Source: Ministeria vibrans ATCC 50519 (Eukaryota; Protista; Filasterea). Taken from it: a DNA stretch of 34,603 bases. The translations under genes and the position numbers were made by a program. The notes beneath the pieces were generated by a model that ran no database searches, was not told the origin of the DNA, and saw only the letters and a list, made by a program, of their open reading frames with translations. Positions 1-34,603 of this stretch are shown one piece after another. How positions within the stretch are numbered: the first letter of the stretch is position 1; each line of letters starts with the position of its first letter. The stretch lies in assembly GCA_943704425.1 (NCBI GenBank), contig CALSCP010001679.1, positions 1 to 34,603 of the forward strand, given 5' to 3'.

Positions 1-3468
<3,468 letters not shown>

Positions 3469-4066
3469 AATCAAAATGTCTCTAAAAAAAAACGAAAAAA
3501 AAAAACAGACTATAAGCAACTGCTCCACACCACCACCACAAAGGGACACTCTGACATGTAAATACAGTCTGAATAACAGCCACAACTCCTTCAAGGGCAC
3601 GACACGCTCTGATTTCGATCGAGTGTGCGGAATTTCGGCGAATGGTGAAAGTCCGGTGAAAGCGGAAATCTTCCGGAAAGCGAAACTCACCTGATACTAG
3701 AACGACGGACTAACTGCTATCACACTGTTGCTACTTGGTACTTCTCAACCAAAAGCTTTCAAGCTATCAAGTAGAATAAAAACGATGATGAGGAAGCGGG
3801 GGAGTAAGAAGGGAGTAATCGAGTTGTGATCGAGTTTCAACTCCATAATAGTTATTCCATCTCTCCTGTGGGTGTCATGCTGAAGAGACTGGAAGGGCAG
3901 GCCGTGTCTTATTGCCAGGTGGTGAACGGGCGGGAGATACGAGAACATCTCTCGTCGATTTTTAACAATATTTTAGCCGGACTTTACTTCCCGACTGTAA
4001 ACAATGAGGAATAGTTATTTTCATCCTTGGTGTTCGTGGTGTGTCTGTGTTAATTCGATTTATTGG

Positions 4067-6536
4067 TTATACAGGAGGGGGTAGCACGGACGATTCGTGA
4101 ATGCGATTCAGAAAGAGATTAATAAGAACAATGAGGAAAAGAGCACAGTCGAAAATAAGAATGGTCACTGTGACAAGGGAGAAGATGAAGGAAAAGGGAC
4201 GATAGTGACCGACAGTGGACGGGAAGCATAGTCGTGCACGGAGTGGACGGGACACGGGAGTAGATGCTAAGACAGAAAAAGAGTGGGTGTATGAGAGATT
4301 GAAATTGACAGACACAGAGTTTGCGAGAGTGAAAAAAAAAAAAGGTGACAGAAACAGGAAAAGAACAAATTGCACTTACGATTGCGGAGAGGAGTGCGCT
4401 CTGAAAGCAGCGCAGACTGCTCGTCCATCATATCGTCCTCATAATACTCATCCGTGTCACTATCGTTGCTGTTGATCCTTATGTTGTTATTGAGTGTGTT
4501 TGTGTTGTTGTTGGAGTGCGTGCTTGTCTTGTCGTCCCAATACTGATCAAAGGCAGACGAGATGACATTGGAATTTGAGCCGGAGTTAAGTCGTTTTTTT
4601 GCTTTGGGCTGTTTCGAGAGCGAAGAGCTCTTCTTTTGTAACGGTCTTCGAGTGGGCGACGCAATGAGGGCGGCAGTGAGAGGAGAGAGACTCTGATTGA
4701 TTGAAGTGGCGTTGTTATTCAGCGTGGTGGAGGAACGAGTGAGCTCGTTCGTGTTCACATTGGCATTTCTTGTTGACTGCGTGTGAAACTGAGTAGAAGA
4801 CGAGCGTAAAACGTGTTCTTCGTCGCACAGAGAACAGCAACATGACACGCTCTCCTTGAGGTGCTCTATTGCTTCACTGCGCGTTTCCCAGTGTGTCGTG
4901 CGCCGTCTGAGGGGAGCAATAGTGAAAGAAAATGAGTAAATAAAAAGTAAGAGTGAGAAGAAGACAGAGAGTGCGTAAAATTGGAGTGGGTGAATGGGAA
5001 CGTAAAGAGCGAGAGTGAGTTTGAGTAAGTGAGTAATAAGAATGAGGTAAGAAAAGCTAGAAAAATTTAAATATAAGCTCGAGTGAGGTGTGTGACTCGG
5101 CTCAGTTTGAGTGTCGTTGATCCTCTCCTTGCTTTTCTTACTGAAGAATGCAGTACTCAACGAGCAACGCCACAAGTTGAAGGACAATCAGAGCGACAGT
5201 GGCAACGGCAGTGCCAATGACGGACTGGAGCCAATTGCGATGGTCTGTCTGTTGCACCTGCGTCGCATACCACACGAGCGAGATGAGAAAGAGAGTGGTA
5301 AGAACCATAGTAAAGGCATGGAAGAGCCGATAGGCCAGCGACCACACAGGCGAGATGGGACCAGCTTCCGTGTGCGACTGTGACAGTGAGTGATCGCGAA
5401 TGCCAAACGACGACGCATAGTAGCTAAAGGTGCGCCGTCGACACGGATGAAACGCATTCGCAATGCCCCGGAAACTCACTATTGACACAATCAGCACAAA
5501 CCACAGCCAGGTGCCCCACAGCATCTCTCCAAGTGCCGTCCCTTGGCTGAAATTCGCCGTCGTGATAGGAAGATCATACGCCAATTCGTACACAAAGCCC
5601 TAAGCGACACGACGTGCAGTTTGTTTGATGTTGTTACCATTGTCACATACGCAATGCAACTTACCATCATTGCTCCGCTGAACATATACTGCCAACCATA
5701 CCCATAGTAGAAAAACGGAAGTCCAGACGGCACTAAGAGGAGAAATTTCTCTCAGAGAAGACACACACAGCTCACAAAGAGGAGAAATTTCCATCAGAGA
5801 AGACCCACACAACTCATAAAGAGAAGAAATTTCCATCAGGGAAGACACACACAACTCACAAAGAGGAGAAATTTCCATCAGAGAAGACCCAACTCATAAA
5901 AAGAAGAGACTTCCATCAGAGAAGACCCACACAACTCACAAAGCGTACTTGTCCACAGCAGACCCCTAAGTCCCATTCCCGAGATGTCACGGAGCCACCG
6001 CTGGCCATAGCTCCAGTCTTGCTCGCTTCGGCCAACGAGCCAGTCAAACACGCCTGAACGATGTGCAAAACGGTGAAAGAGTGAAAGTGCGGTTTTCTCG
6101 TTTACCTGCTCGCGAATTGTACGCATGGGCGTTACGGCCAATGTCAAAGTAGCACCCCCAGCCAACATAGAGGGTGAAAAAGGTCAGGACGGCAACAAGG
6201 AGGCCGAGAAGGGGTTTTCGCGCGAGGTAAGCAACGAGAACACCCGTTGGAATAGCAAAGACAAAGCGGTTGCAAGCATCGTGGCCCAGCACTGAGTCGT
6301 TGAACGACGTGCTGCAGTGCAGTGTCCCCCAGCCGCCTGTCGAAATAAGGCGGGGAGAGGGCGGAAAGTGTCGTGTTGAGCGGGAAGGGATGAGATCGCT
6401 TGATCTTGTGATTGGCGTTACCTCGAATACGGTTCAGCAGTCCTCCCATGCACGAGAGAAGCACGACAAAGGCCACGGAAAGAGTTCCTTCAACGACTTT
6501 GGCCCGACTCCACGGGCTGGGAGTGATCGTCTCCAT
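4067..6536 (-). CDS. Multi-pass membrane protein of unknown function (about 7 exons)
   Basis: Spliced frame METITPSPW...GGLLNRIRG|GWG...YVGWGCYFDIGR...GVFDWLVG...RDISGMGLRGLLWT|MPSGLPFF...LGEMLWGTWLWF. Further hydrophobic segments, an N/S/T-rich loop and a final hydrophobic segment end at TAA 4067. The GT-AG junctions I checked are phase-compatible. Confidence 0.7.
5735..5942. repeat. 42-bp minisatellite, 5 units, filling intron 5733-5948
   Basis: Unit ~AAGAGGAGAAATTTCCATCAGAGAAGACCCACACAACTCACA starts at 5735, 5777, 5819, 5861 (38 bp) and 5899. Confidence 0.95.
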
Positions 6537-6637
6537 TGCAGCGAGTGATGAAAAATGAATGAAATCTCAAAATTGAAAATGTGATCGAATTTGAGACAGT
6601 TTGGTGAAGAACAATTATTTAACCGCGTCGGTCAACA

Positions 6638-8231
6638 ATGAGCAATCGTGCGTCATCGACCCGCTTACCGGTTGTCAAAACGGCGACCGTCCGGAGAGGT
6701 GCGACAAAGATTGTCAATTTGATCGGTTTGTTTACTGAACTTTCTTTGATGTATCTACCTAGAAGGACCAGTGGCCGAGCCGCGCGAGTCCCTGAAGAAG
6801 CTGATACAGGGCAACACACAGCTTGTCGAGCAAAGAAGGCGGCGCGCGTCGATTATCGAATCAGAGGTAACCAATAATGAATGTTTATTTGGCAAAACAT
6901 TGCAAAATCACGCACTTTGCGGCTCTGTCAGCGGGAGATGTGGCCTTTGCTGGAAAGTGATGTGCGTACTTGGACGTGTGTGCTTGTATGTGTGTGTGCA
7001 CGTGGACTCATTTTGCTCTGAATGTGAATTAGGCGCTTGCTGACGTTGTCGAGCAGCGTCGAAGTGGTTCGGAACGTCCTACACTCGAAATACTGGAGGC
7101 TATGGTGCAGCTGGGCCGTCACCAGGTTGGAATGGGCGACAACGAGAGTCTGTGCAAGGCGCTTGAGGTCCTCAGCTCGGCACACGCGCTTGCCGGCGAA
7201 CTGATTGCCGAGGAAGGCTCCACCTCATTCGAACATCACCGTGAGCTTAGCCACGAAGCGGACTATCTGCTTGCCCGTGCCCACCAGGGTCTGGGCGACC
7301 TTGACCTTGCAGTGCGTATTCTCACCACTCTCGTGGCCTCACAGGAGGCGCTGCGCAAGGACACCGGCGCAATGAGTGCCATTGTTACCAATGCCGTCTA
7401 CTGCGACGCACTCGGCGACTCACTAGTGCTCGCAGGGAGACAACAGGTACCCGTTTGTGAGTGTATGTGATGGTGGTGTACCAGTTGTTTGTGCGAGTAA
7501 CATATTTTTTATTGTATGTGTGCGGCTTAGGAGGGAATAGTGTTTTTTACGCGGGCAATACGTCTACTGGAAGACCTATCTGAAGCATCCGCTCGTGCTC
7601 AAGTAAGACCTTTCTTAATCTCTGGGTGTGTGACTGTGTATATCTATTTCACCGATTGTTTTTCACACACACACATACACACACTCTTTCTATCTTTCTC
7701 TCTATCTGTCTCTCTCTCACTCTCTATCTTTCTCTTTCTCAGCTTGCAAGAACGTGTGTAAATCTGGCGCGAATGCTGACACACAGCCACAGCGAGAGCC
7801 CATACGCCCCTCAGTCGCTCTACAAACGTGCTCTTGTCATCCAGCGCTCTCTTGGTCTTTTTGCCGATGCCGCTGAAACCTGCCAGTCGCTCGCGTCAAT
7901 TGAACTCTCAGCTGGTACGACCTTATTACGTTAACCCCTAATCCTATACACTTCTTCTTTTGCTCCGATAGGACACGTCAGCGACGCATTACCATACTAC
8001 GATAATTCCCTGAGCATCATTGAAGAACAGCATCGCGACGACCCCTCACACCCCGACGTCTGCTTCACACTCTGCTTTGTCGCTCAAGTCCATCAGGAGA
8101 ACAAAAGCAATGCGCGCGCTCATTCTCTCTTCTCACGCGCCGTCACACTTCTAACGCAACGCTTTGGCGAAGATCATCCCGCTACCAAACAGGCTCAAGA
8201 GTCCCTTCGCTCCTCCAACTTTTACCAATGA
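6638..8231 (+). CDS. TPR-repeat protein (kinesin-light-chain-type TPRs)
   Basis: Spliced MSNRASSTRL...E|ALADVVEQRR...YLLARAHQGLGDLDLAVRIL...LYKRALVIQRSLG...HPDVCFTL...FGEDHPATKQAQESL, stop TGA 8229-8231. Confidence 0.75.
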
Positions 8232-27695: not shown

Positions 27696-27906
27696 TCAAC
27701 CATGAACAACCAGCGACGCCCAGTAGAGTGGCGATGCGTAAGGGCGAGCACCGCGTGTCGATAGCCGCTGTGCAATCGCCGAAGCCTCAGAGGGAGCCAC
27801 AGTCTGCACAATGGACATGGCCTCGTCCCTGGATAACTCCCGAAGCCACTTTTGTGCCCCCAACACTGCCTGTGCCACTGTCATCCCAGGTGTAGCCTAA
27901 ACACAC

Positions 27907-28002
<96 letters not shown>

Positions 28003-31000
28003 AAGAAAGAAGGGAGAAAAAAACAAAGTGATAGAGAGAGAGAAAGAAGGGAGAAAAAAACAAAGTGATAGAGTGAGAGAAGGGAGAAAAAAACAAAGTG
28101 ATAGAGAGAGAAAAGGGAGAAAAAAACAAAGTGATAGAGAAACATTAGATACCCGTCCGGAGAGGTACATACATACATATACACACTTACGTGAAGCAAC
28201 GAGTAAAGCCGCCCCACCAAGAGCATGCTCGATTCGTCGTTAAGCATCCACAGACTGTGCACCACCGAGTCCGCACCACTGTAGATCAAACTCATGGGCA
28301 ACAGAGAGGCCTCGGCACCCACCGCAGTGTCCACCACATTAGCCGTGTGGCCCGTCAGCAAAACCATCTTGGCATGGGGCAGTCGCACATGACTGAAAAT
28401 GTCCCCAATAGTCACACTCTCCTTGTTAGCCATCTCGAGGGTCCATCGCAGAGGATCGGGCGCAGTCACCACACTACGACATGCCAGGTGCAACGTCAAC
28501 GACGCCTCCAACGCCTCCTCAAACAGCTTCTCGGCAGTCGCCTCCTCCGTGGCGAACCGTGTCACCGCATCCCTCCCAAACGTCTCCGCAATCTGCACCG
28601 ACTCCGCATACGCCAAAGGCATGTCGCCGCGCGGGTTCTCGTACACCACAATAGGCGTAAACCCGTCCATTTGCGAGCGTGACGTGCGCGCCGCCGAGCG
28701 TCGGTACTTCCACACCACCATTTGCAGGTTGGCTGCAATGCGTAAACCGCCGGAGCGCGGCAGGTCGCTCAGACGACGTCCATCCACAAGAGGCAACGCC
28801 TGCAGGGGCACGGAGCAGAGTGCACGGTGGGGCACAAGCAGCAACTCAGAGGCACTCTCAAGCGACGGCACAAGCAGTTCAAGCTCAAGCAGCTGCGACA
28901 ATGCTCCAAGAGCCTGTTCGAGATCCGCCGCGTTTTGCGCACTCGCAGCCGTCCGCACGCGCAAACACATGGCAATAACCTGTTCCGTCGTGCATCGCAT
29001 CGTCTCCGCCATAATGTTCTCGCCCTGCAAAACCACCACGTACGGAGATCCGCCTGTCGGCAGGAACCACTCGACGCACGTCGTGTGCGGCAGAGTTCGT
29101 CGAACATCCGAAAGCGTCACACGTCGCACAGTTCGCGCCGCCGCAAAGTCCGAGTCGTTGATGGCCACAAAGTCCTCGAGACGCTGTAATGGCGCGCGCA
29201 TTTGTGTCGCCGCAAATTCACGGCTGTCGACGTCCCGCGACAGCGAATTTCTATCCTGCAGGTAGCGCTCAGCGTTTACCTGCTCGCGCGCCTGCTGCAC
29301 CGCCAACAACAAGTTGGTGTACTCGTCGGCAACGGAGTCGGGTAGGTGCGGCTGCAACATCTGCTTGGTGACCAACTCAACGGTGCGACGTGCCGCTGAT
29401 CGCTCCATGTAGCTCCAGGCCGCCTCGGGTCGCTTCAGCTGAATGCACGCGCCCACCAACTCCGCGTACATCTCGTAGTAGTTGACGTTGAGCGTCACAG
29501 GCGTCGCGTCTGAGCGCAACATCTCATCCTTGGACATCTTGCCTGCATACTGCGTCACGACGTCCGCACCAATGCGCCCGTGCACAACAATAGTCTCGGC
29601 CACGGACACACCGCCGTCCCACACGGAAATGGCGTCTTCCAGACGGCCCAGTCGTGCCAGATCCTTGCCCAGAAAGTAGCTCGTCTCGACAAACAACACG
29701 GGATGGCGGTCCTTTGTAAACACTTGCAGTGCCTCCTGGCGTCGCGCCACCGTCGTCTTGCGGTTCTCCGCTGTCTTGCCCTTCTTGCGGTCCCAAAAGG
29801 CATCCGCCAGTCGGTTGCACAACAGGCCCCAGGACTTGAGTCTCGTCGCCAAAATTGTCTTCTCGTTCTCCAAGTTCTCCTGGTACCTCTTCATCACTGC
29901 GTCGTTGTCGCCTGCATCCACACCCGCGCCGTTCGCCGCCGGCACCATACCAGCGGCGCCACTTGCGCCCGGAACACCGCTCGTCGAGTCGTCAGCGAGT
30001 GCCCCAAGCATTCGATTGCGGAACGACTTGGCCGCGTTACCCGACTGTCCGCCGCTAGCGGCCGTCGACGACGAACCAGCGCCCGACGCACCCCCTGTCG
30101 CACTGGCGCCCGGCGGTGGCACAGCGTTGCCCATCATGCTTGCCAGACTGGTGAGCGCCGCTAACTCAGTGCCACCACCTGGTTTGTTCTTCTTCGACTT
30201 GCTACCTTTGGGCTTCACCAGCATGCTGCGCACGTCAAAGGCCAGCTCGTATCGCTTGATCGCCTCCTCCACATGATGATCCTTCTTGTCGCGTGGTCGC
30301 TGCAAAAACAAATCTCCAATGCGCTCTTGCAGGGTCGCCCAGCGCTCCGGCTCGCGGTCCTTGCTCATCATCTTGAGCGCCACCTTGTACGCCTTGACCG
30401 CCTCGTCACGGTGAGCCTCGGCGTCAGACGGCGATCCAAGCGTGTGCGCCGCGTACGCATTGCCCAGACTCACCTGTACCGCCAAGTGCTGGTCCGGATA
30501 CGACTGCGACGTGTACACAATCAGCGACTCGCGCAGCATGCGCACCGCTTCGTCGAGATTCTTGGAGCGGTCACCACGCAGACGTGCCATGTACACGAGC
30601 GCAAGGTTGTGGCGCGTGAGAGCCCACTCTGGCGCAAAGTGTTCGCGAGTGTAAACCTCAAACGCGCTCTGATGGCGCCGAATGGACTCTTCAAGATTCT
30701 CGGCGCGGTCTCCACGAATACGCACCTGAAACGACGCCGCCAGGTTGTTCTGCGTGAGTGCCCACTTTTGCGGATTGGCCCCAATGGTGCGCACCTCGAG
30801 CGCCAGCATACACCGTCGAATCGCCTCCTCTTGATTCTCGGCCTTGTCGCCGCGCAGACGCTCCTCGTACACCAGCGAGATGTTGTTCTGCGTCGACGCC
30901 CAGTTCTCGGGGTCTGCCTCGCGCGTATACACATCCACTGTGGCACGGTAGCACTTGAGCGCCATTTCGAGGTTCTCGCCGCGGTCGCCCTTGACACGTT

Positions 31001-34000
31001 CCTGGTAGGCAGCCGCAATGTTGTTCACGGTGGCCGCCCATTTGCGTGGATTGCGGTCGCGTGTGCGCACCAGCAGTGCATTGTTGCAGCATTCAATGGC
31101 ACGCTCAATGTTCTCCGCGTGCACCCCGCGCATTCGCTGGTGATAGGCGCTTGCCAAGTTGTTCATGGTAGACGCCCAGTCGTCCGGCGTGTCGCGCATC
31201 GTGAACACCTTGAGAGCAAGTTCACAGCGTCGCACAGCCTCCTCAATGTTGTCGGCTCGCGAACCGACCACGCGCTCCTGATAGGCGGCCGCAAGGTTGT
31301 TCTGTGTCGCGGCCCACTTGAGAGGGTTGACCTCGCGCGTGCGTACTTCGAGAGCCTGGTTGCAGTAGCGAATTACCTCTTCGATGTTGTCGGCACGCAG
31401 ACCCTTGACGCGCTCCTGGTAGGCGCTCGCCAGATTGTTGAGGGTCGCAGCCCAGTCTTCGGGATGCCGATCGCGTGTGTACACATGCAGGGCCTGTTGA
31501 CAGCCGACAATCACCATTTCAATGTTGTCGGCGCGGTTTCCCTTGATGCGCACACGGTAGAGCTTGGCCATGTTGATTTGCAGCGCGGCCCACCAGAGGG
31601 GATCTTCGTTGCGCGTGCGCACCTTCATGCTCTCGAGGAAGCGACGAATAGCCTCCTCTTGATTCTCGGAGCGATCGCCCTCGCGACGGTCCGTGAACGC
31701 AATGGCCAGGTTGATTTGGGCCATGGACCAGAGCTCGGGGAAGCTCGCCTGGTTGTACACCTGGAGCGCACACGAGAAGTGCATGATGGCCTTCTCAACA
31801 TTAATGTCGTGGTCGCCCATCTGACGCTCCTGGTACGACATGGCAAGACTGTTGTGAATGTTGGCCCACGTTTCGACGTGAGGGTCGCGCGGCAGCAGTT
31901 GCAGTGCCCACTCAAAGTGACGAATGGCCAACTCAAGGTTCTCGCGACGCGTTCCGGTGCGTCGAGTGAATGCCTCGTACGCCTGGCTGTAATGCTCCTC
32001 GGCCTTGGTCGCGTCCGGCTCGCGAATGTCTGTCTGCGAGCCACCCACAATGGAGACAGCGGAAGCAGTCGTTGACGTGACCTGCGCACCCGATTGCGTA
32101 CGTTTAGTTGGCGTCAGTGTTGTCGAGCGTGGCGTGCGGTCGAGGGCCTGGAGACCGCGTGCGAGAGCGTCGGCGACGTCGGGTGCAGGCTCGTGCATGA
32201 GCGAGCCAGGACGCTCCGTCTTCTTCTTCTTCTTCTTGCCACTCGAACCGGGCGCGCTCGTAATCGTCGCACTCGGTGTTCCCATGCCATTGGTGTTGTC
32301 CTGAGAGGTCTTGGTGGTTGAGGCGGTCGACACAGCCGACGGTCGAGAGCGACCCGACGAGATGGCTAGGGCACCAAGCACAGCAAGTGCCGCATCACTG
32401 TCGTCCTCTTGGTCGTCAGGTCCCACCGCCGGCTCCGACGCCGCAAGTTTCGAACGTTCCATACGCTCACGGTCACGTTCGCGACGCAAATGATGTTGTT
32501 CCGCGACACGATCGGCTGTCTCACGCTTGTGACGCTCCTCGGCCTCAGCACGCGTCTGCTCCTCGGCCAACAGACGCGCCTTGTCCGCCTCGATTTGACG
32601 GGCCTCCGCCTCAGCCTTGTCGCGTGCTGCACGCTCAGCTGCCTCAGCCTTTTCGCGCGCAACACGCTCAATGGCCTCGCGCTCGGCTTCCTCCATGGCG
32701 GCAAGACGCGCCGCATTTTCCTTGGCAACACGAGCCTCTTCGGCCTTGCGCGCTTCCTCGGCGGCCTTGCGCGCTGCCTCCTCTGCCTTCTTCTTCTCGG
32801 CAGCCGCACGCTCGGCCGCTGCGAGTGTCGCAATGCGCTTCTGTTCGAGAGATTCTCGCGCGCGATGCAGTGCCGCCACGAGCGATCGATTGTACACGAC
32901 GGCAACACGCGCCGATCGATGAAACATGGACACGGCTGTGTCAATTTCGGCGCGTCGCAGACGATCGGCAATGCGTTTGCGCGCTTTCTCGAGCACACGA
33001 TGACGCCAGACACGCTGGATGCGCACGACGAGGCGCACGGCCCGACGGAAGCGGCGAACCCGCTCAAGCCGTTGGCGAGCGCGCACCAAAGCACCGTGTA
33101 CCCAAAAGTGTCGTATGTGGGCAACCATGACGGAGAAGCGCACGAACCAAGCAAGGGCGTGGGTACGACGCAGTTGGATCCGGGCGCGTGCGAGCGCAGG
33201 GTAGACGGTCTTTTGGATGACGGTGACGACGCGCACAGCCTTGATAAAGCGACGTGCCGCACGGTGGCGGTTGAGGATGCGTTTGAGGCGTGAGCAAGCA
33301 CGACAGGCATTGATGGCACTATGAAAACGGCGACGTGCAAGCCACGACTTGACACGCTTGACCACATCGGCCATTTGCGACTCGCTACCGTCGCCGATAA
33401 GGTCCTCGAGAATGGCCATTTTGCCGGGACGAAAGAACACTTTGGTAAGGCCAATCTGGAAGTCCTTGTCACCGCTGAGATTGAGCGCCACGAGAAGCGC
33501 CTCACAGAACATGGACGGCTTGAGCTTGGCAATGACTGGTGGCATGGCGGGCGCATAGCGTTCGTAGAGGGTCTCAAACGAGCAACGTGTGGGGAAACCC
33601 GCCTGCATGAGCTGCACGGCCGCACACATGCCCGAACAACGCAGTTGCAACATGACCATGTTGGAGTCAAAATCGTCGGCGATTTGCTTGCTGTTTGGCT
33701 TGATGCAACGGATAAAGTGGCTCGGGCTCTTGTTGAGACGCTCCAGCAGGTGATGAAGCTGCACCTTGAAGCGACTGGCCACACTCTTGGTACGTTTGGT
33801 CGCCCCTGTTGGGCTACCAATAGCGTTGCTCAGGGCCTTTTTGCATGGAGTGAGCTACGAAATGAGAGAAGAAAGAACAAAGTGTGTGTTTTAAGGAAGA
33901 TTAGGAAACGAAAAAACAAAAAAGAGAAATATGAGAGAAATGCTATTCAACATTTGTGTGCATACGGAAGAGTCGTTTAGAATGGCGACAAGAGAGTCGT

Positions 34001-34603
34001 GGAGTTGATCGTTGTTCTTCTCGAGGAAACCTTCGACTTCGTAGACGACTTCACCAGCAAAATGGACCACAATGAACCCTTGGTCTTGCTTCACCTTGGC
34101 CAGCCGTCCCATTTGCTTCAAACTGGAGCTCCCCTTGTTCATTTTGAGCACCTGTACAACAACAAAAGATAGAACGAGAGAGATGCAAGAGTAAGTGACA
34201 ACACCAAAATAAAAAGTTGATTACCTTTTCGCAGTAGGTGCGATCGGAAGCGTTGGGAAAGACACACTCTTCGTCAAGGAGCGCCAGGAGACCGACGCGA
34301 CGGTCTTCCACGAGCTCGATGGTTGAGGTGTTGTCGTGGAACTCGACCTTGCGGTAGCGCAAAGCCTCCATCTCGTAAATGTTCTGCTCCTGCATGAGAA
34401 TCTGGCGGTTAAAGTACTGCTGGAGCTGCTCGTTGACGTGGTTGATGCAGAGCTGCTCGAATCCGTTGCGTTTGAACACCTCAAAACCCGCAATGTCGAG
34501 AATGCCAATGAGTGTTTGGTCCGGAGAGTCATCACTTGAAGTGGTTGATTCCCTCGGCACAGATCCCACCGTTCTGGCACGGCGACGATGCACACTCGTC
34601 AAT
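27696..34603 (-). CDS. Myosin (class VI-like motor) - atypical IQ neck - SAH - 46-aa TPR array - CHAT domain fusion; 5' part lies outside the window
   Basis: Exons >34603-34225, 34151-33966, 33854-28191 and 27896-27696, all phase 0. Motor motifs: IGILDIAGFE, FEQLCINHVNEQLQQYFN, HFAGEVVY, FIRCIKPN, GLTKVFFRPGK. TPR consensus: WAxTxNNLAxAYxERxxGxRAxNxE. CHAT motifs: LLLVPHRALCSVPLQAL, SVVHSLW, PYASPLYWASLVVHG*. Confidence 0.92.
27911..28141. repeat. (AG)n run plus 4 copies of a ~34-37-bp unit with core AAACAAAGTGATAGAG in the last myosin intron
   Basis: AG run at 27911-27998, then four GGGAGAAAAAAACAAAGTGATAGAG units. Confidence 0.9.

What the first reader, a model, noticed from the sequence alone, without database searches (positions are those of the whole stretch)
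27696..34603. Myosin VI-like motor fused to a bacterial-type TPR-CHAT (caspase-family) module
Seen: one continuous reading frame joins a myosin motor C-terminus, a neck, an E/R/K/A-rich single-alpha-helix-like segment, about 14 TPR-like repeats and a complete CHAT domain ending in the YWAxxV.G motif. The junction lies inside one gap-free exon, so it is not a splicing guess. Established: TPR-CHAT proteins are mainly bacterial caspase-HetF-family proteins linked to conflict, cell-death and signalling systems. Myosin VI tails normally carry a cargo-binding domain instead. Inference: a horizontally acquired TPR-CHAT was recruited as the tail of an actin motor, giving an actin-transported sensor or scaffold. 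I know of no described myosin with this architecture, but cannot search to confirm.
Basis: partly seen in the sequence, partly recalled or inferred. Interest (0 to 1): 0.93.

Follow-up and report, generated by a model that had tools for sequence, protein, structure and literature searches.

The report
Myosin with bacterial-type TPR-CHAT tail
A marine single-celled eukaryote expresses one gene that joins a myosin VI-like actin motor to a whole bacterial-style TPR-CHAT (caspase-like) protein. The protease catalytic residues are lost, so the tail probably works as a binding scaffold; no myosin of this build was found elsewhere.

Summary
On the minus strand, one 5,664-base exon (33854-28191) reads without a stop through these parts:
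- the end of a myosin motor;
- a myosin VI-type insert-2-like neck;
- a 140-residue charged single-helix-like segment;
- a low-complexity linker;
- 13-14 repeats of a 46-residue TPR unit;
- most of a CHAT domain.

A 294-base GT-AG intron and a 66-codon last exon finish the CHAT domain (PLYWASLVVHG, stop at 27696).

Contigs from independent public runs span the motor-to-TPR junction, including one from a polyA RNA library. One contig shows the last intron spliced exactly as predicted.

The tail is collinear with whole cyanobacterial-type TPR-CHAT proteins. Its codon composition matches the host's.

- The CHAT His-Cys dyad is replaced by Arg and His, so it is probably a pseudoprotease.
- The motor is "VI-like". 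It groups with PH-tailed myosins of Capsaspora and choanoflagellates, not with animal class VI proper. Its core lies in a 1,209-base N-run.
- TPR-CHAT is not only bacterial: animals have TTC28.

I found no other myosin with a CHAT tail. Bacterial origin is likely but not proven.

The scan had noted another bacterial-style TPR-CHAT gene in this genome, but no second myosin fusion.

The parts
34225..34602 (-). Motor exon with the switch II region (LDIAGFE). Its 5' side abuts an N-run at 34604-35812 of the scaffold, outside the window.
   Evidence: Pfam Myosin_head 359-461, E 8.8e-40; tblastn to Capsaspora MYO6 residues 425-521, 64% identity
34152..34224 (-). Intron, 73 bases, GT..AG
   Evidence: sequence read
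33966..34151 (-). Motor exon
   Evidence: Pfam Myosin_head 471-519, E 1.4e-11
33855..33965 (-). Intron, 111 bases, GT..AG
   Evidence: sequence read; in-frame stop at 33857-33855
33429..33854 (-). Start of the 5,664-base exon: motor C-terminus and converter (exon residues 1-142)
   Evidence: Pfam Myosin_head 546-679; best solved relatives are myosin VI, 140 bits against 104 for myosin Va
32865..33428 (-). Neck (residues 143-330): insert-2-like stretch (VKRVKSWLARRRF...) followed by Arg-rich amphipathic repeats. No canonical IQ motif.
   Evidence: aligns almost without gaps to pig myosin VI residues 770-825; 21% Arg and no strict IQ match
32445..32864 (-). Charged single-alpha-helix-like segment (residues 331-470)
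   Evidence: 52% charged, 11% hydrophobic, no Pro/Gly; i/i+4 salt-bridge pairs 36 against 18.7 +/- 3.4 in shuffles
31935..32444 (-). Low-complexity S/T/A/G/P linker with a KKKKKK run (residues 471-640). This is the junction between the motor-derived and bacterial-type parts.
   Evidence: composition; covered without a break by an X1 contig (30391-33600) and a polyA-RNA contig of X12 (31229-32690)
30135..31934 (-). Array of about 12 TPR units of 46 residues (W-A-x-T-Q-N-N-L-A-x-A-Y ... R-A-x-N-x-E-x-A-I), residues 641-1240
   Evidence: TPR_12 at 69.7 bits and TPR_10 at 41.9 bits; lag-46 identity 0.374; same unit consensus as the bacterial relatives; 40-47% identity to cyanobacterial arrays
29865..30134 (-). 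Ala/Gly/Ser-rich insertion splitting the array (residues 1241-1330). It is exonic, not an intron.
   Evidence: composition; retained in the spliced contig of X11 and in the polyA-RNA contig of X12
29295..29864 (-). Last one or two degenerate TPR units and the helical linker that precedes CHAT in bacterial relatives (residues 1331-1520)
   Evidence: collinear BLASTP alignment to Nostoc protein P0004 residues 745-1266, E 7e-22
28191..29294 (-). CHAT domain, main part (residues 1521-1888). Arg at 28478-28476 replaces the catalytic His, and His at 28349-28347 replaces the catalytic Cys.
   Evidence: Pfam CHAT 10-248, 57 bits against a cut-off of 24; AlphaFold model pLDDT 82; Foldseek best match Craspase TPR-CHAT, E 4e-11; dyad columns
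27897..28190 (-). Intron, 294 bases, GTAAGT..AG, holding an (AG/CT) run of about 69 copies and a 33-base minisatellite
   Evidence: removed in X11 contig record 17, which joins 28190 to 27895 (one base of ambiguity)
27696..27896 (-). Last exon: CHAT C-terminus (66 codons, ...PLYWASLVVHG) and the TGA stop at 27698-27696
   Evidence: Pfam CHAT 252-288; sequence

Best explanation
This is a genuine, transcribed chimeric gene of a marine, non-photosynthetic unicellular eukaryote. It encodes roughly 2,500-2,600 residues.

Front half (shown). It is a myosin of the VI-like group: an N-terminal SH3-like exon, a motor, a converter, an insert-2-like neck and a single-alpha-helix-like spacer. A sister paralogue in the same genome has the same motor and neck but a coiled-coil plus ankyrin tail.

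Back half (shown). After the spacer, the ancestral tail is replaced by a module equal in length and order to a whole bacterial, cyanobacterial-type TPR-CHAT protein: 13-14 TPR units of 46 residues, a helical linker and a CHAT caspase-like domain.

Inferred origin. The module came from bacteria. The transfer is not recent, because the module has host codon composition, a spliceosomal intron and eukaryote-type low-complexity insertions.

Inferred function. Both catalytic residues are replaced (His to Arg, Cys to His), so the CHAT domain no longer cuts peptide bonds. The TPR solenoid and dead CHAT domain then act as the cargo- or partner-binding tail that the motor positions or pulls along actin. 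If the insert-2-like neck works as in myosin VI, movement would be toward minus ends.
For: Continuity and expression:
- A stop-free frame of 1,888 codons crosses the junction.
- All sampled 31-mers are present in runs of another study, and 10 studies hold the stretch.
- An X1 contig covers 30391-33600 and a polyA-RNA contig covers 31229-32690 with no differences. An X11 contig has the last intron spliced out.

Domains.

Motor affinity:
- Myosin VI is the best solved relative, and the alignment runs through insert 2.
- In the tree, this motor is sister to the C141 paralogue (support 100) inside the PH-tail VI-like clade (support 91).
- The paralogue's tail is a coiled coil plus ankyrin repeats.

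Tail affinity:
- The top 120 relatives are bacterial or metagenomic TPR-CHAT proteins, some covering 99% of the module.
- The nearest Atlas clusters with recorded taxa are all bacterial, mostly Cyanobacteriota.
- The best named CHAT relatives are Limnospira and Leptolyngbya.
- The alignment to a Nostoc protein is collinear, and the repeat consensus is the same.

Dead dyad: Arg and His where 146/149 and 145/149 relatives have His and Cys. The dyad is defined in PMC9729208.

Fold: pLDDT 82, with Craspase TPR-CHAT as the best match.

Host-like composition: GC3 is 0.73-0.75 in the tail against 0.65-0.70 in the motor.
Against: - No experiment or interaction prediction supports any binding partner or movement.
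- The motor core (P-loop, switch I, insert 1) lies in an N-run, so an intact ATPase is assumed, not seen.
- No single read or contig shown covers the whole mRNA. An internal start giving a stand-alone TPR-CHAT product cannot be excluded.
- Bacterial origin rests on similarity ranking. Animal TTC28-type and other eukaryotic TPR-CHAT proteins were not placed in a tree.
- The CHAT domain is only 29% identical to its best relative, so its placement would be weak in any case.
Confidence: 0.7

Rival explanations
1. The TPR-CHAT tail was inherited vertically from an old eukaryotic TPR-CHAT family (the one that gave animal TTC28 and the coral expansions) and was fused to the myosin by ordinary exon shuffling. 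No horizontal transfer was involved.
For: - TPR-CHAT architecture is conserved across animals (PMC12314368).
- The motor's nearest relatives are from Capsaspora and choanoflagellates, so the organism may be related to animals.
- The genome holds a small family of such genes: C1228, C1660 and C556.
- Codon composition is fully host-like.
Against: - All named best relatives are bacterial: the whole module among 5.8 billion sequences, the CHAT domain among 1.84 billion representatives, and the Atlas clusters with recorded taxa.
- No EukProt or MMETSP protein is among the top 120 hits.
- The 46-residue unit consensus equals the cyanobacterial one.
- The tail is closer to a Nostoc protein (88 bits) than to its own-genome paralogue (37 bits).
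Confidence: 0.2
2. The CHAT domain is still an active protease using non-canonical residues, for example His1836 together with the retained neighbouring Cys1792. The myosin would then carry a caspase-like effector along actin.
For: A Cys directly precedes the replaced His, and a His sits at the Cys position. The fold around the site is predicted with confidence.
Against: - That Cys is also conserved in active relatives, where it is not the nucleophile (consensus C-H-G).
- Both dyad positions are changed, which is seen in almost none of the 149 relatives.
- The loop after the site is predicted poorly (pLDDT below 50 at residues 319-330).
- The second CHAT gene of this genome has also lost both residues.
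Confidence: 0.07
3. The fusion is an artefact: a misassembly, bacterial contamination, or two adjacent genes read as one.
For: The scaffold has an N-run inside the same gene. No single shown contig covers the full gene.
Against: - A frame of 1,888 codons with no stop crosses the junction.
- Contigs from other studies, one from a polyA RNA library, cross 32450-32000 without a difference.
- All sampled words are present in runs X1-X4.
- The bacterial-type part has a spliced GT-AG intron carrying a microsatellite and minisatellite, and has host GC3.
Confidence: 0.03
4. The gene is a young, effectively neutral chimera on its way to decay. It is transcribed but has no selected function for the tail.
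For: The catalytic residues are lost, low-complexity insertions split the module, and the CHAT domain is very divergent at 29% identity to its best relative. No orthologue was found.
Against: - About 5.9 kb of tail-coding frame is intact.
- The TPR units still match the family consensus at 40-47% identity.
- The sequence is nearly identical in runs of several studies and organism labels.
Confidence: 0.1

Closest known systems
Myosin VI and the 'VI-like' PH-tailed myosins (Capsaspora 'MYO6 variant', choanoflagellates, Fonticula, some amoebozoans)
   Same: The converter is closest to solved myosin VI. An insert-2-like stretch follows it with almost no gaps, then a charged single-helix-like segment as in the myosin VI medial tail. 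In the tree the motor falls in the PH-tail clade next to animal class VI.
   Different: There is no myosin VI cargo-binding domain and no PH or RUN domain. The tail is TPR-CHAT instead. The neck has Arg-rich repeats and no canonical IQ motif. Insert 1 and the ATPase core are hidden in an N-run.
Cyanobacterial-type TPR-CHAT proteins (for example the Nostoc protein P0004 of 1,350 residues, and Microcystis and Leptolyngbya relatives)
   Same: Same order and similar total length (about 1,335 against 1,350 residues). The 46-residue TPR unit consensus, the helical linker (..ERS..R..VEL..), the CHAT domain and the closing P-x-Y-W-A motif are shared.
   Different: Here the module is fused behind a myosin, carries an intron and two low-complexity insertions, has host GC3, and has lost the His-Cys dyad.
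Craspase TPR-CHAT (Csx29) of type III-E CRISPR systems
   Same: It is the best solved structural match to the CHAT model (Foldseek E 4e-11, TM 0.54-0.61). It is also a TPR domain followed by a caspase-like CHAT domain.
   Different: Csx29 is an active protease with His585/Cys627 that is switched on by Cas7-11 (PMC9729208). Here there is no dyad, no CRISPR context and no PADLOC match. Sequence identity is 13-17%.
Animal TTC28 / TPRBK and coral TPR-CHAT domain proteins
   Same: These are eukaryotic proteins with a long TPR array followed by one CHAT domain (PMC12314368).
   Different: They are not linked to a motor. The relationship to this tail was not tested because no such sequence was at hand. 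None appeared among the best hits.
Sister paralogue in the same genome (scaffold C141, locus L009)
   Same: 60% identity over the converter and neck, the same VKRWLARRRF-type neck, and a charged helix after the neck.
   Different: Its tail is a long coiled coil plus ankyrin repeats, with no TPR-CHAT. This marks the point after the charged helix as the site of tail replacement.

Membership tests
Myosin superfamily (Pfam Myosin_head PF00063) | Motor domain matching the family model above its cut-off | tested here: met
   Three exon pieces match profile positions 359-461, 471-519 and 546-679, with 137, 43.9 and 103 bits against a cut-off of 33.3.
Myosin superfamily (Pfam Myosin_head PF00063) | Intact ATPase core (P-loop, switch I) | not testable with these tools
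   This part lies in the N-run at 34604-35812 of the scaffold. Switch II (LDIAGFE) is present.
Class VI myosin | Insert 2 ('reverse gear') between the converter and the first light-chain site | tested here: met
   The alignment to pig myosin VI (2bki) continues through chain residues 770-825 with almost no gaps. Myosin VI scores 140 bits against 104 for myosin Va. This is sequence level only; calmodulin binding and directionality are untested.
Class VI myosin | Insert 1 near the nucleotide pocket | not testable with these tools
   The region is hidden in the N-run.
Class VI myosin | Myosin VI cargo-binding domain in the tail (PF16521) | tested here: not met
   No such Pfam hit. The animal relatives carry it.
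Class VI myosin | Grouping with class VI in a motor tree | tested here: inconclusive
   A tree of 210 C-terminal motor and neck residues places it in the PH-tail clade (support 91), beside but not inside the animal class VI clade (support 99). The joined full motor was not used.
CHAT domain, caspase-like proteases (PF12770) | Match to the family model above its cut-off, and the closing P-x-Y-W-A-x-F/L..G motif | tested here: met
   57 bits against a cut-off of 24 for positions 10-248. The last exon matches 252-288 and ends PLYWASLVVHG.
CHAT domain, caspase-like proteases (PF12770) | Caspase/separase-like fold | tested here: met
   AlphaFold model with pLDDT 82.3. Foldseek matches: Craspase TPR-CHAT at E 4e-11, DdvA at 5e-6, separase at 6e-6.
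CHAT domain, caspase-like proteases (PF12770) | Catalytic His-Cys dyad | tested here: not met
   Arg1793 and His1836 occupy columns where 146/149 and 145/149 nearest representatives have His and Cys. The dyad is defined in PMC9729208.
Bacterial 46-residue-unit TPR-CHAT proteins | Array of 46-residue units with the W-A-x-T-Q-N-N-L-G-x-A-Y ... A-E-N-L-E-x-A-I consensus, then a helical linker, then CHAT, in that order | tested here: met
   Period 46; shared consensus; collinear alignment; 26-31% identity over 99% of the module and 40-47% over the array.
Craspase (type III-E CRISPR) Csx29 | Partnership with Cas7-11 (gRAMP) and membership of a defence locus | tested here: not met
   The gene is eukaryotic with introns. 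There is no PADLOC family match.
Animal TTC28 / TPRBK family | Orthology by tree to the metazoan TPR-CHAT proteins | not tested
   No TTC28 sequence was available from the tools. The family is known from PMC12314368.
Single alpha-helix (ER/K) domains | Long, highly charged helix with i/i+4 opposite charges and no hydrophobic heptad seam | tested here: met
   140 residues, 52% charged; 36 pairs against 18.7 +/- 3.4 in shuffles; only 7 of 15 L/I/V/M/F residues fit any single heptad register. This rests on composition only.

The most novel reading that the evidence does not exclude
A complete bacterial conflict-type TPR-CHAT protein was captured by a protist, lost its protease chemistry, and was re-used as the cargo-binding tail of a possibly minus-end-directed, myosin VI-like motor. 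This would be the first cytoskeletal motor whose tail is a domesticated prokaryotic caspase-like module. The bolder variant is that it still senses a ligand through its TPR array and triggers a response at actin-rich sites.
Probability: 0.45. Interest if true: 0.72.

Novelty: new variant of a known kind. Interest (0 to 1): 0.6.

Why it matters
Myosin tails decide what a motor carries. New tails usually come from shuffling of eukaryotic domains. Here the tail matches a whole bacterial-type protein of a family otherwise known from caspase-like proteases of bacterial defence and cell-differentiation systems, and its active site is erased.

If the bacterial origin holds, this is a clear case of a prokaryotic module being turned into a eukaryotic motor adaptor. 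It also adds a natural pseudo-CHAT domain to compare with separase, Craspase and TTC28, whose TPR and CHAT functions in animals are still poorly understood.

It is a single gene in one poorly sampled lineage, with no functional data. Its weight is mainly evolutionary for now.

Tried and rejected
- Bacterial contamination or misassembly: rejected.
- Alga with a cyanobacterial endosymbiont gene: no chlorophyll a/b-binding protein gene was found in the genome, so plastid-derived transfer is unlikely.
- Recent duplication from the other CHAT gene of this genome (C1228): rejected. The two share only 22% identity (37 bits), less than this tail shares with a Nostoc protein.
- Known defence-system or NCBI family membership: none. 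The TolA hits are compositional matches to the charged helix.
- PDB sequence search with the CHAT piece: no hit.
- Word-based search with the last 636 residues: one weak hit only, so there are no fragmentary orthologues.
- Papers: no paper holds both 'myosin' and 'CHAT domain'. Two myosin surveys do not mention CHAT or TPR.
It says nothing either way.
- The search for related loci with alignment A1 failed for lack of a conserved stretch.
Every exon was searched by reference on its own, so there is no whole-protein domain scan or full-motor tree.
Full report
**1. What is in the sequence**

The minus strand of 27696-34603 carries the 3' two-thirds of one gene. The window is G000 scaffold C1679:1-34603. 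The scaffold continues with an N-run at 34604-35812.

Beyond the N-run, at 36083-35907, lies a probable first exon (MVLAEGDKVW...VMLVN). It weakly resembles myosin VI N-termini.

Inside the window the parts are, in gene order:
- exon 34602-34225 (Myosin_head positions 359-461);
- a 73-base GT-AG intron;
- exon 34151-33966 (positions 471-519);
- a 111-base GT-AG intron;
- the large exon 33854-28191 (1,888 codons);
- a 294-base GT-AG intron that holds an (AG)n run and a 33-base minisatellite;
- the last exon 27896-27699, with the stop at 27698-27696.

**2. Domain content**

All domain searches were done exon by exon. The large exon holds:
- the end of the motor (Myosin_head 546-679, E 1.7e-29);
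- a neck;
- a 140-residue charged helix-like segment;
- a 170-residue low-complexity linker;
- about 12 TPR units;
- a 90-residue Ala/Gly/Ser insertion;
- one or two more degenerate TPR units and a helical linker;
- CHAT positions 10-248.

The last exon supplies CHAT positions 252-288 and the closing PLYWASLVVHG.

The TPR period is exactly 46 residues: identity at lag 46 is 0.374 against about 0.06 at other lags. The charged segment has twice the i/i+4 opposite-charge pairs of shuffled versions, and no Pro or Gly.

**3. Is the fusion real?**

- A stop-free frame of 5.7 kb across the junction cannot arise by chance or from a random misjoin.
- The stretch is held by 20 public runs of 10 studies. 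Four runs of a study other than the likely source hold all sampled 31-mers.
- Laid on 27696-33600, an X1 contig of 5,235 bases covers 30391-33600 without a difference.
- A contig from a polyA RNA-Seq library (X12) covers 31229-32690. That runs from the charged helix through the linker into the TPR array.
- An X11 contig joins 28190 to 27895. This removes the predicted intron, with one base of alignment ambiguity, while keeping the Ala/Gly/Ser insertion.

So the junction is not an assembly join, the low-complexity stretches are exonic, and the gene is transcribed and spliced.

No single contig shown covers the whole mRNA. A separate shorter product cannot be excluded.

**4. The motor half**

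- The nearest proteins among 5.8 billion are Capsaspora 'MYO6 variant' (60% identity), then choanoflagellate, Fonticula and amoebozoan myosins with PH-domain tails. RUN-tailed myosins and animal myosin VI follow.
- Among solved structures, myosin VI is the best match (140 bits against 104 for myosin Va). The alignment continues almost without gaps through the class VI insert 2.
- A tree of the 210 C-terminal motor and neck residues puts this gene as sister to a paralogue on scaffold C141 (support 100). Both lie inside the PH-tail clade (support 91), beside the animal class VI clade.
- The paralogue shares the motor, the unusual Arg-rich neck and a charged helix. It then continues into a long coiled coil and ankyrin repeats.

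The tail was therefore exchanged after the charged helix, following a duplication. 'Myosin VI-like' is fair; class VI proper is not shown. Insert 1 and the ATPase core are hidden in the N-run.

The genome has at least 25 myosin loci and no chlorophyll a/b-binding protein gene. The runs that hold the gene are marine. I could not name the organism; its own proteins are absent from the protein collections.

**5. The tail half**

- From about exon residue 620 to the end, the protein aligns over 99% of its length with whole bacterial proteins of 1,350-1,960 residues. Identity is 40-47% within the TPR array.
- All named relatives are bacteria, mostly filamentous cyanobacteria, plus Anaerolineae, Ktedonobacterales and one betaproteobacterium.
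- The unit consensus of those proteins is the same as here. Order and spacing of the last unit, helical linker and CHAT domain are collinear with a Nostoc protein.
- An exhaustive HMMER search of 1.84 billion representatives with the CHAT piece found nothing better than 29% identity (E 1.5e-22). The named best hits are Limnospira and Leptolyngbya.
- Nearest ESM Atlas clusters with recorded taxa are 100% bacterial.
- GC3 of the tail (0.73-0.75) matches the host genes, and the module has a spliced intron.

The module is therefore resident and not recent. A bacterial origin is the simplest reading, and I give it about 0.7.

It is not proven. TPR-CHAT proteins are conserved in animals (TTC28) and expanded in corals (PMC12314368), and I could not put those in a tree.

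The genome holds at least three more genes with this repeat type:
- C1228 (short TPR plus CHAT, also without the dyad);
- C1660 (TPR only);
- C556.

Earlier notes of this scan flagged similar genes in this genome.

**6. The CHAT domain is catalytically degenerate**

In alignments with 18 close relatives and with 149 representatives, the catalytic His column holds Arg here (codon 28478-28476). The catalytic Cys column holds His (codon 28349-28347). Among the relatives, 146/149 have His and 145/149 have Cys.

The His-Cys dyad is what makes TPR-CHAT and separase proteases (PMC9729208).

The fold itself is predicted well (pLDDT 82). It matches Craspase TPR-CHAT best (E 4e-11), then the anti-sigma factor DdvA and separase.

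The faster divergence of CHAT (29% identity) compared with the TPR units (40-47%) fits relaxed constraint on a former active site.

**7. Most likely mechanism**

Shown:
- a transcribed myosin-TPR-CHAT fusion;
- a VI-like converter and insert-2-like neck;
- a spacer helix;
- a bacterial-type TPR solenoid;
- a dead CHAT domain.

Inferred:
- The motor is active.
- The TPR solenoid and pseudo-CHAT domain form the partner-binding tail that replaces the PH or ankyrin tails of its relatives.
- The protein therefore anchors or moves an unknown partner on actin, possibly toward minus ends.
- The CHAT domain may contribute self-association.

**8. Novelty**

- None of the 120 nearest myosins contains a TPR-CHAT-like region, and none of the 269 nearest TPR-CHAT proteins contains a myosin-like region.
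- Two pan-eukaryotic myosin surveys do not mention CHAT or TPR tails (PMC3942036, PMC5583752).
- No paper in the library holds both 'myosin' and 'CHAT domain'.

Myosin tails are known to be shuffled often.

**9. Limits**

- The motor core is unseen.
- There are no functional data.
- The lineage is poorly sampled, so absence of orthologues is weak evidence of uniqueness.

Noticed in passing
scaffold C1679:34604-35812 (just past the window end; L003:805-2013): A 1,209-base N-run hides the P-loop, switch I and insert 1 part of the motor. An X1 contig that covers 30391-33600 runs on for 2,025 more bases beyond 33600, so it may hold the missing part.
   Followed up: partly
L009 (G000:C141:53500-63499), frames 1347-2867 and 2868-7793, + strand: Sister paralogue of the motor, 60% identical over the converter and neck. 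It has the same Arg-rich neck but a long coiled-coil plus ankyrin-repeat tail.
   Followed up: partly
L007 (G000:C1228:1-10000), frames 1377-3176 and 3475-3933, - strand: A second, short TPR-CHAT-like gene that ends SPYFWASQSVLG. It also lacks the dyad (Glu and Phe at the His and Cys columns) and is only 22% identical to the window's tail.
   Followed up: partly
G000:C1660:3617-4504 (+) and G000:C556:40613-41623 (+): Further genes with the same 46-residue TPR unit (38-41% and 29% identity) and no CHAT match. Together with C1228 they form a small family of bacterial-style TPR genes in this genome.
   Followed up: no
window 27911-28140: The last intron holds an (AG)n run of about 69 copies and 4.2 copies of a 33-base minisatellite. 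Public-run contigs pile up and break here, so the element is repeated in the genome.
   Followed up: no
window 30391: In run X1 two contigs meet here with a 30-base overlap. A third contig carries 255 unlike bases on the low-coordinate side, and the two matching contigs have different depths (481 against 121). This could be a shared word with a paralogous TPR unit or a second transcript form; it was not resolved.
   Followed up: no
window 32220-32240 (exon residues about 540-546): A KKKKKK run sits in the low-complexity linker between the charged helix and the TPR array. It could be a nuclear-localisation or lipid-binding patch.
   Followed up: no
L003:2419-2718, - strand (scaffold 36218-36517): A frame ending in a UBA-like C-terminus stops only about 135 bases upstream of the myosin's predicted start codon. 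Gene spacing here is very tight.
   Followed up: no
window 30987, 32333, 32910: These are the only differences seen between the window and four public runs (G>A, C>T, C>T). The gene is nearly identical across studies and organism labels.
   Followed up: no
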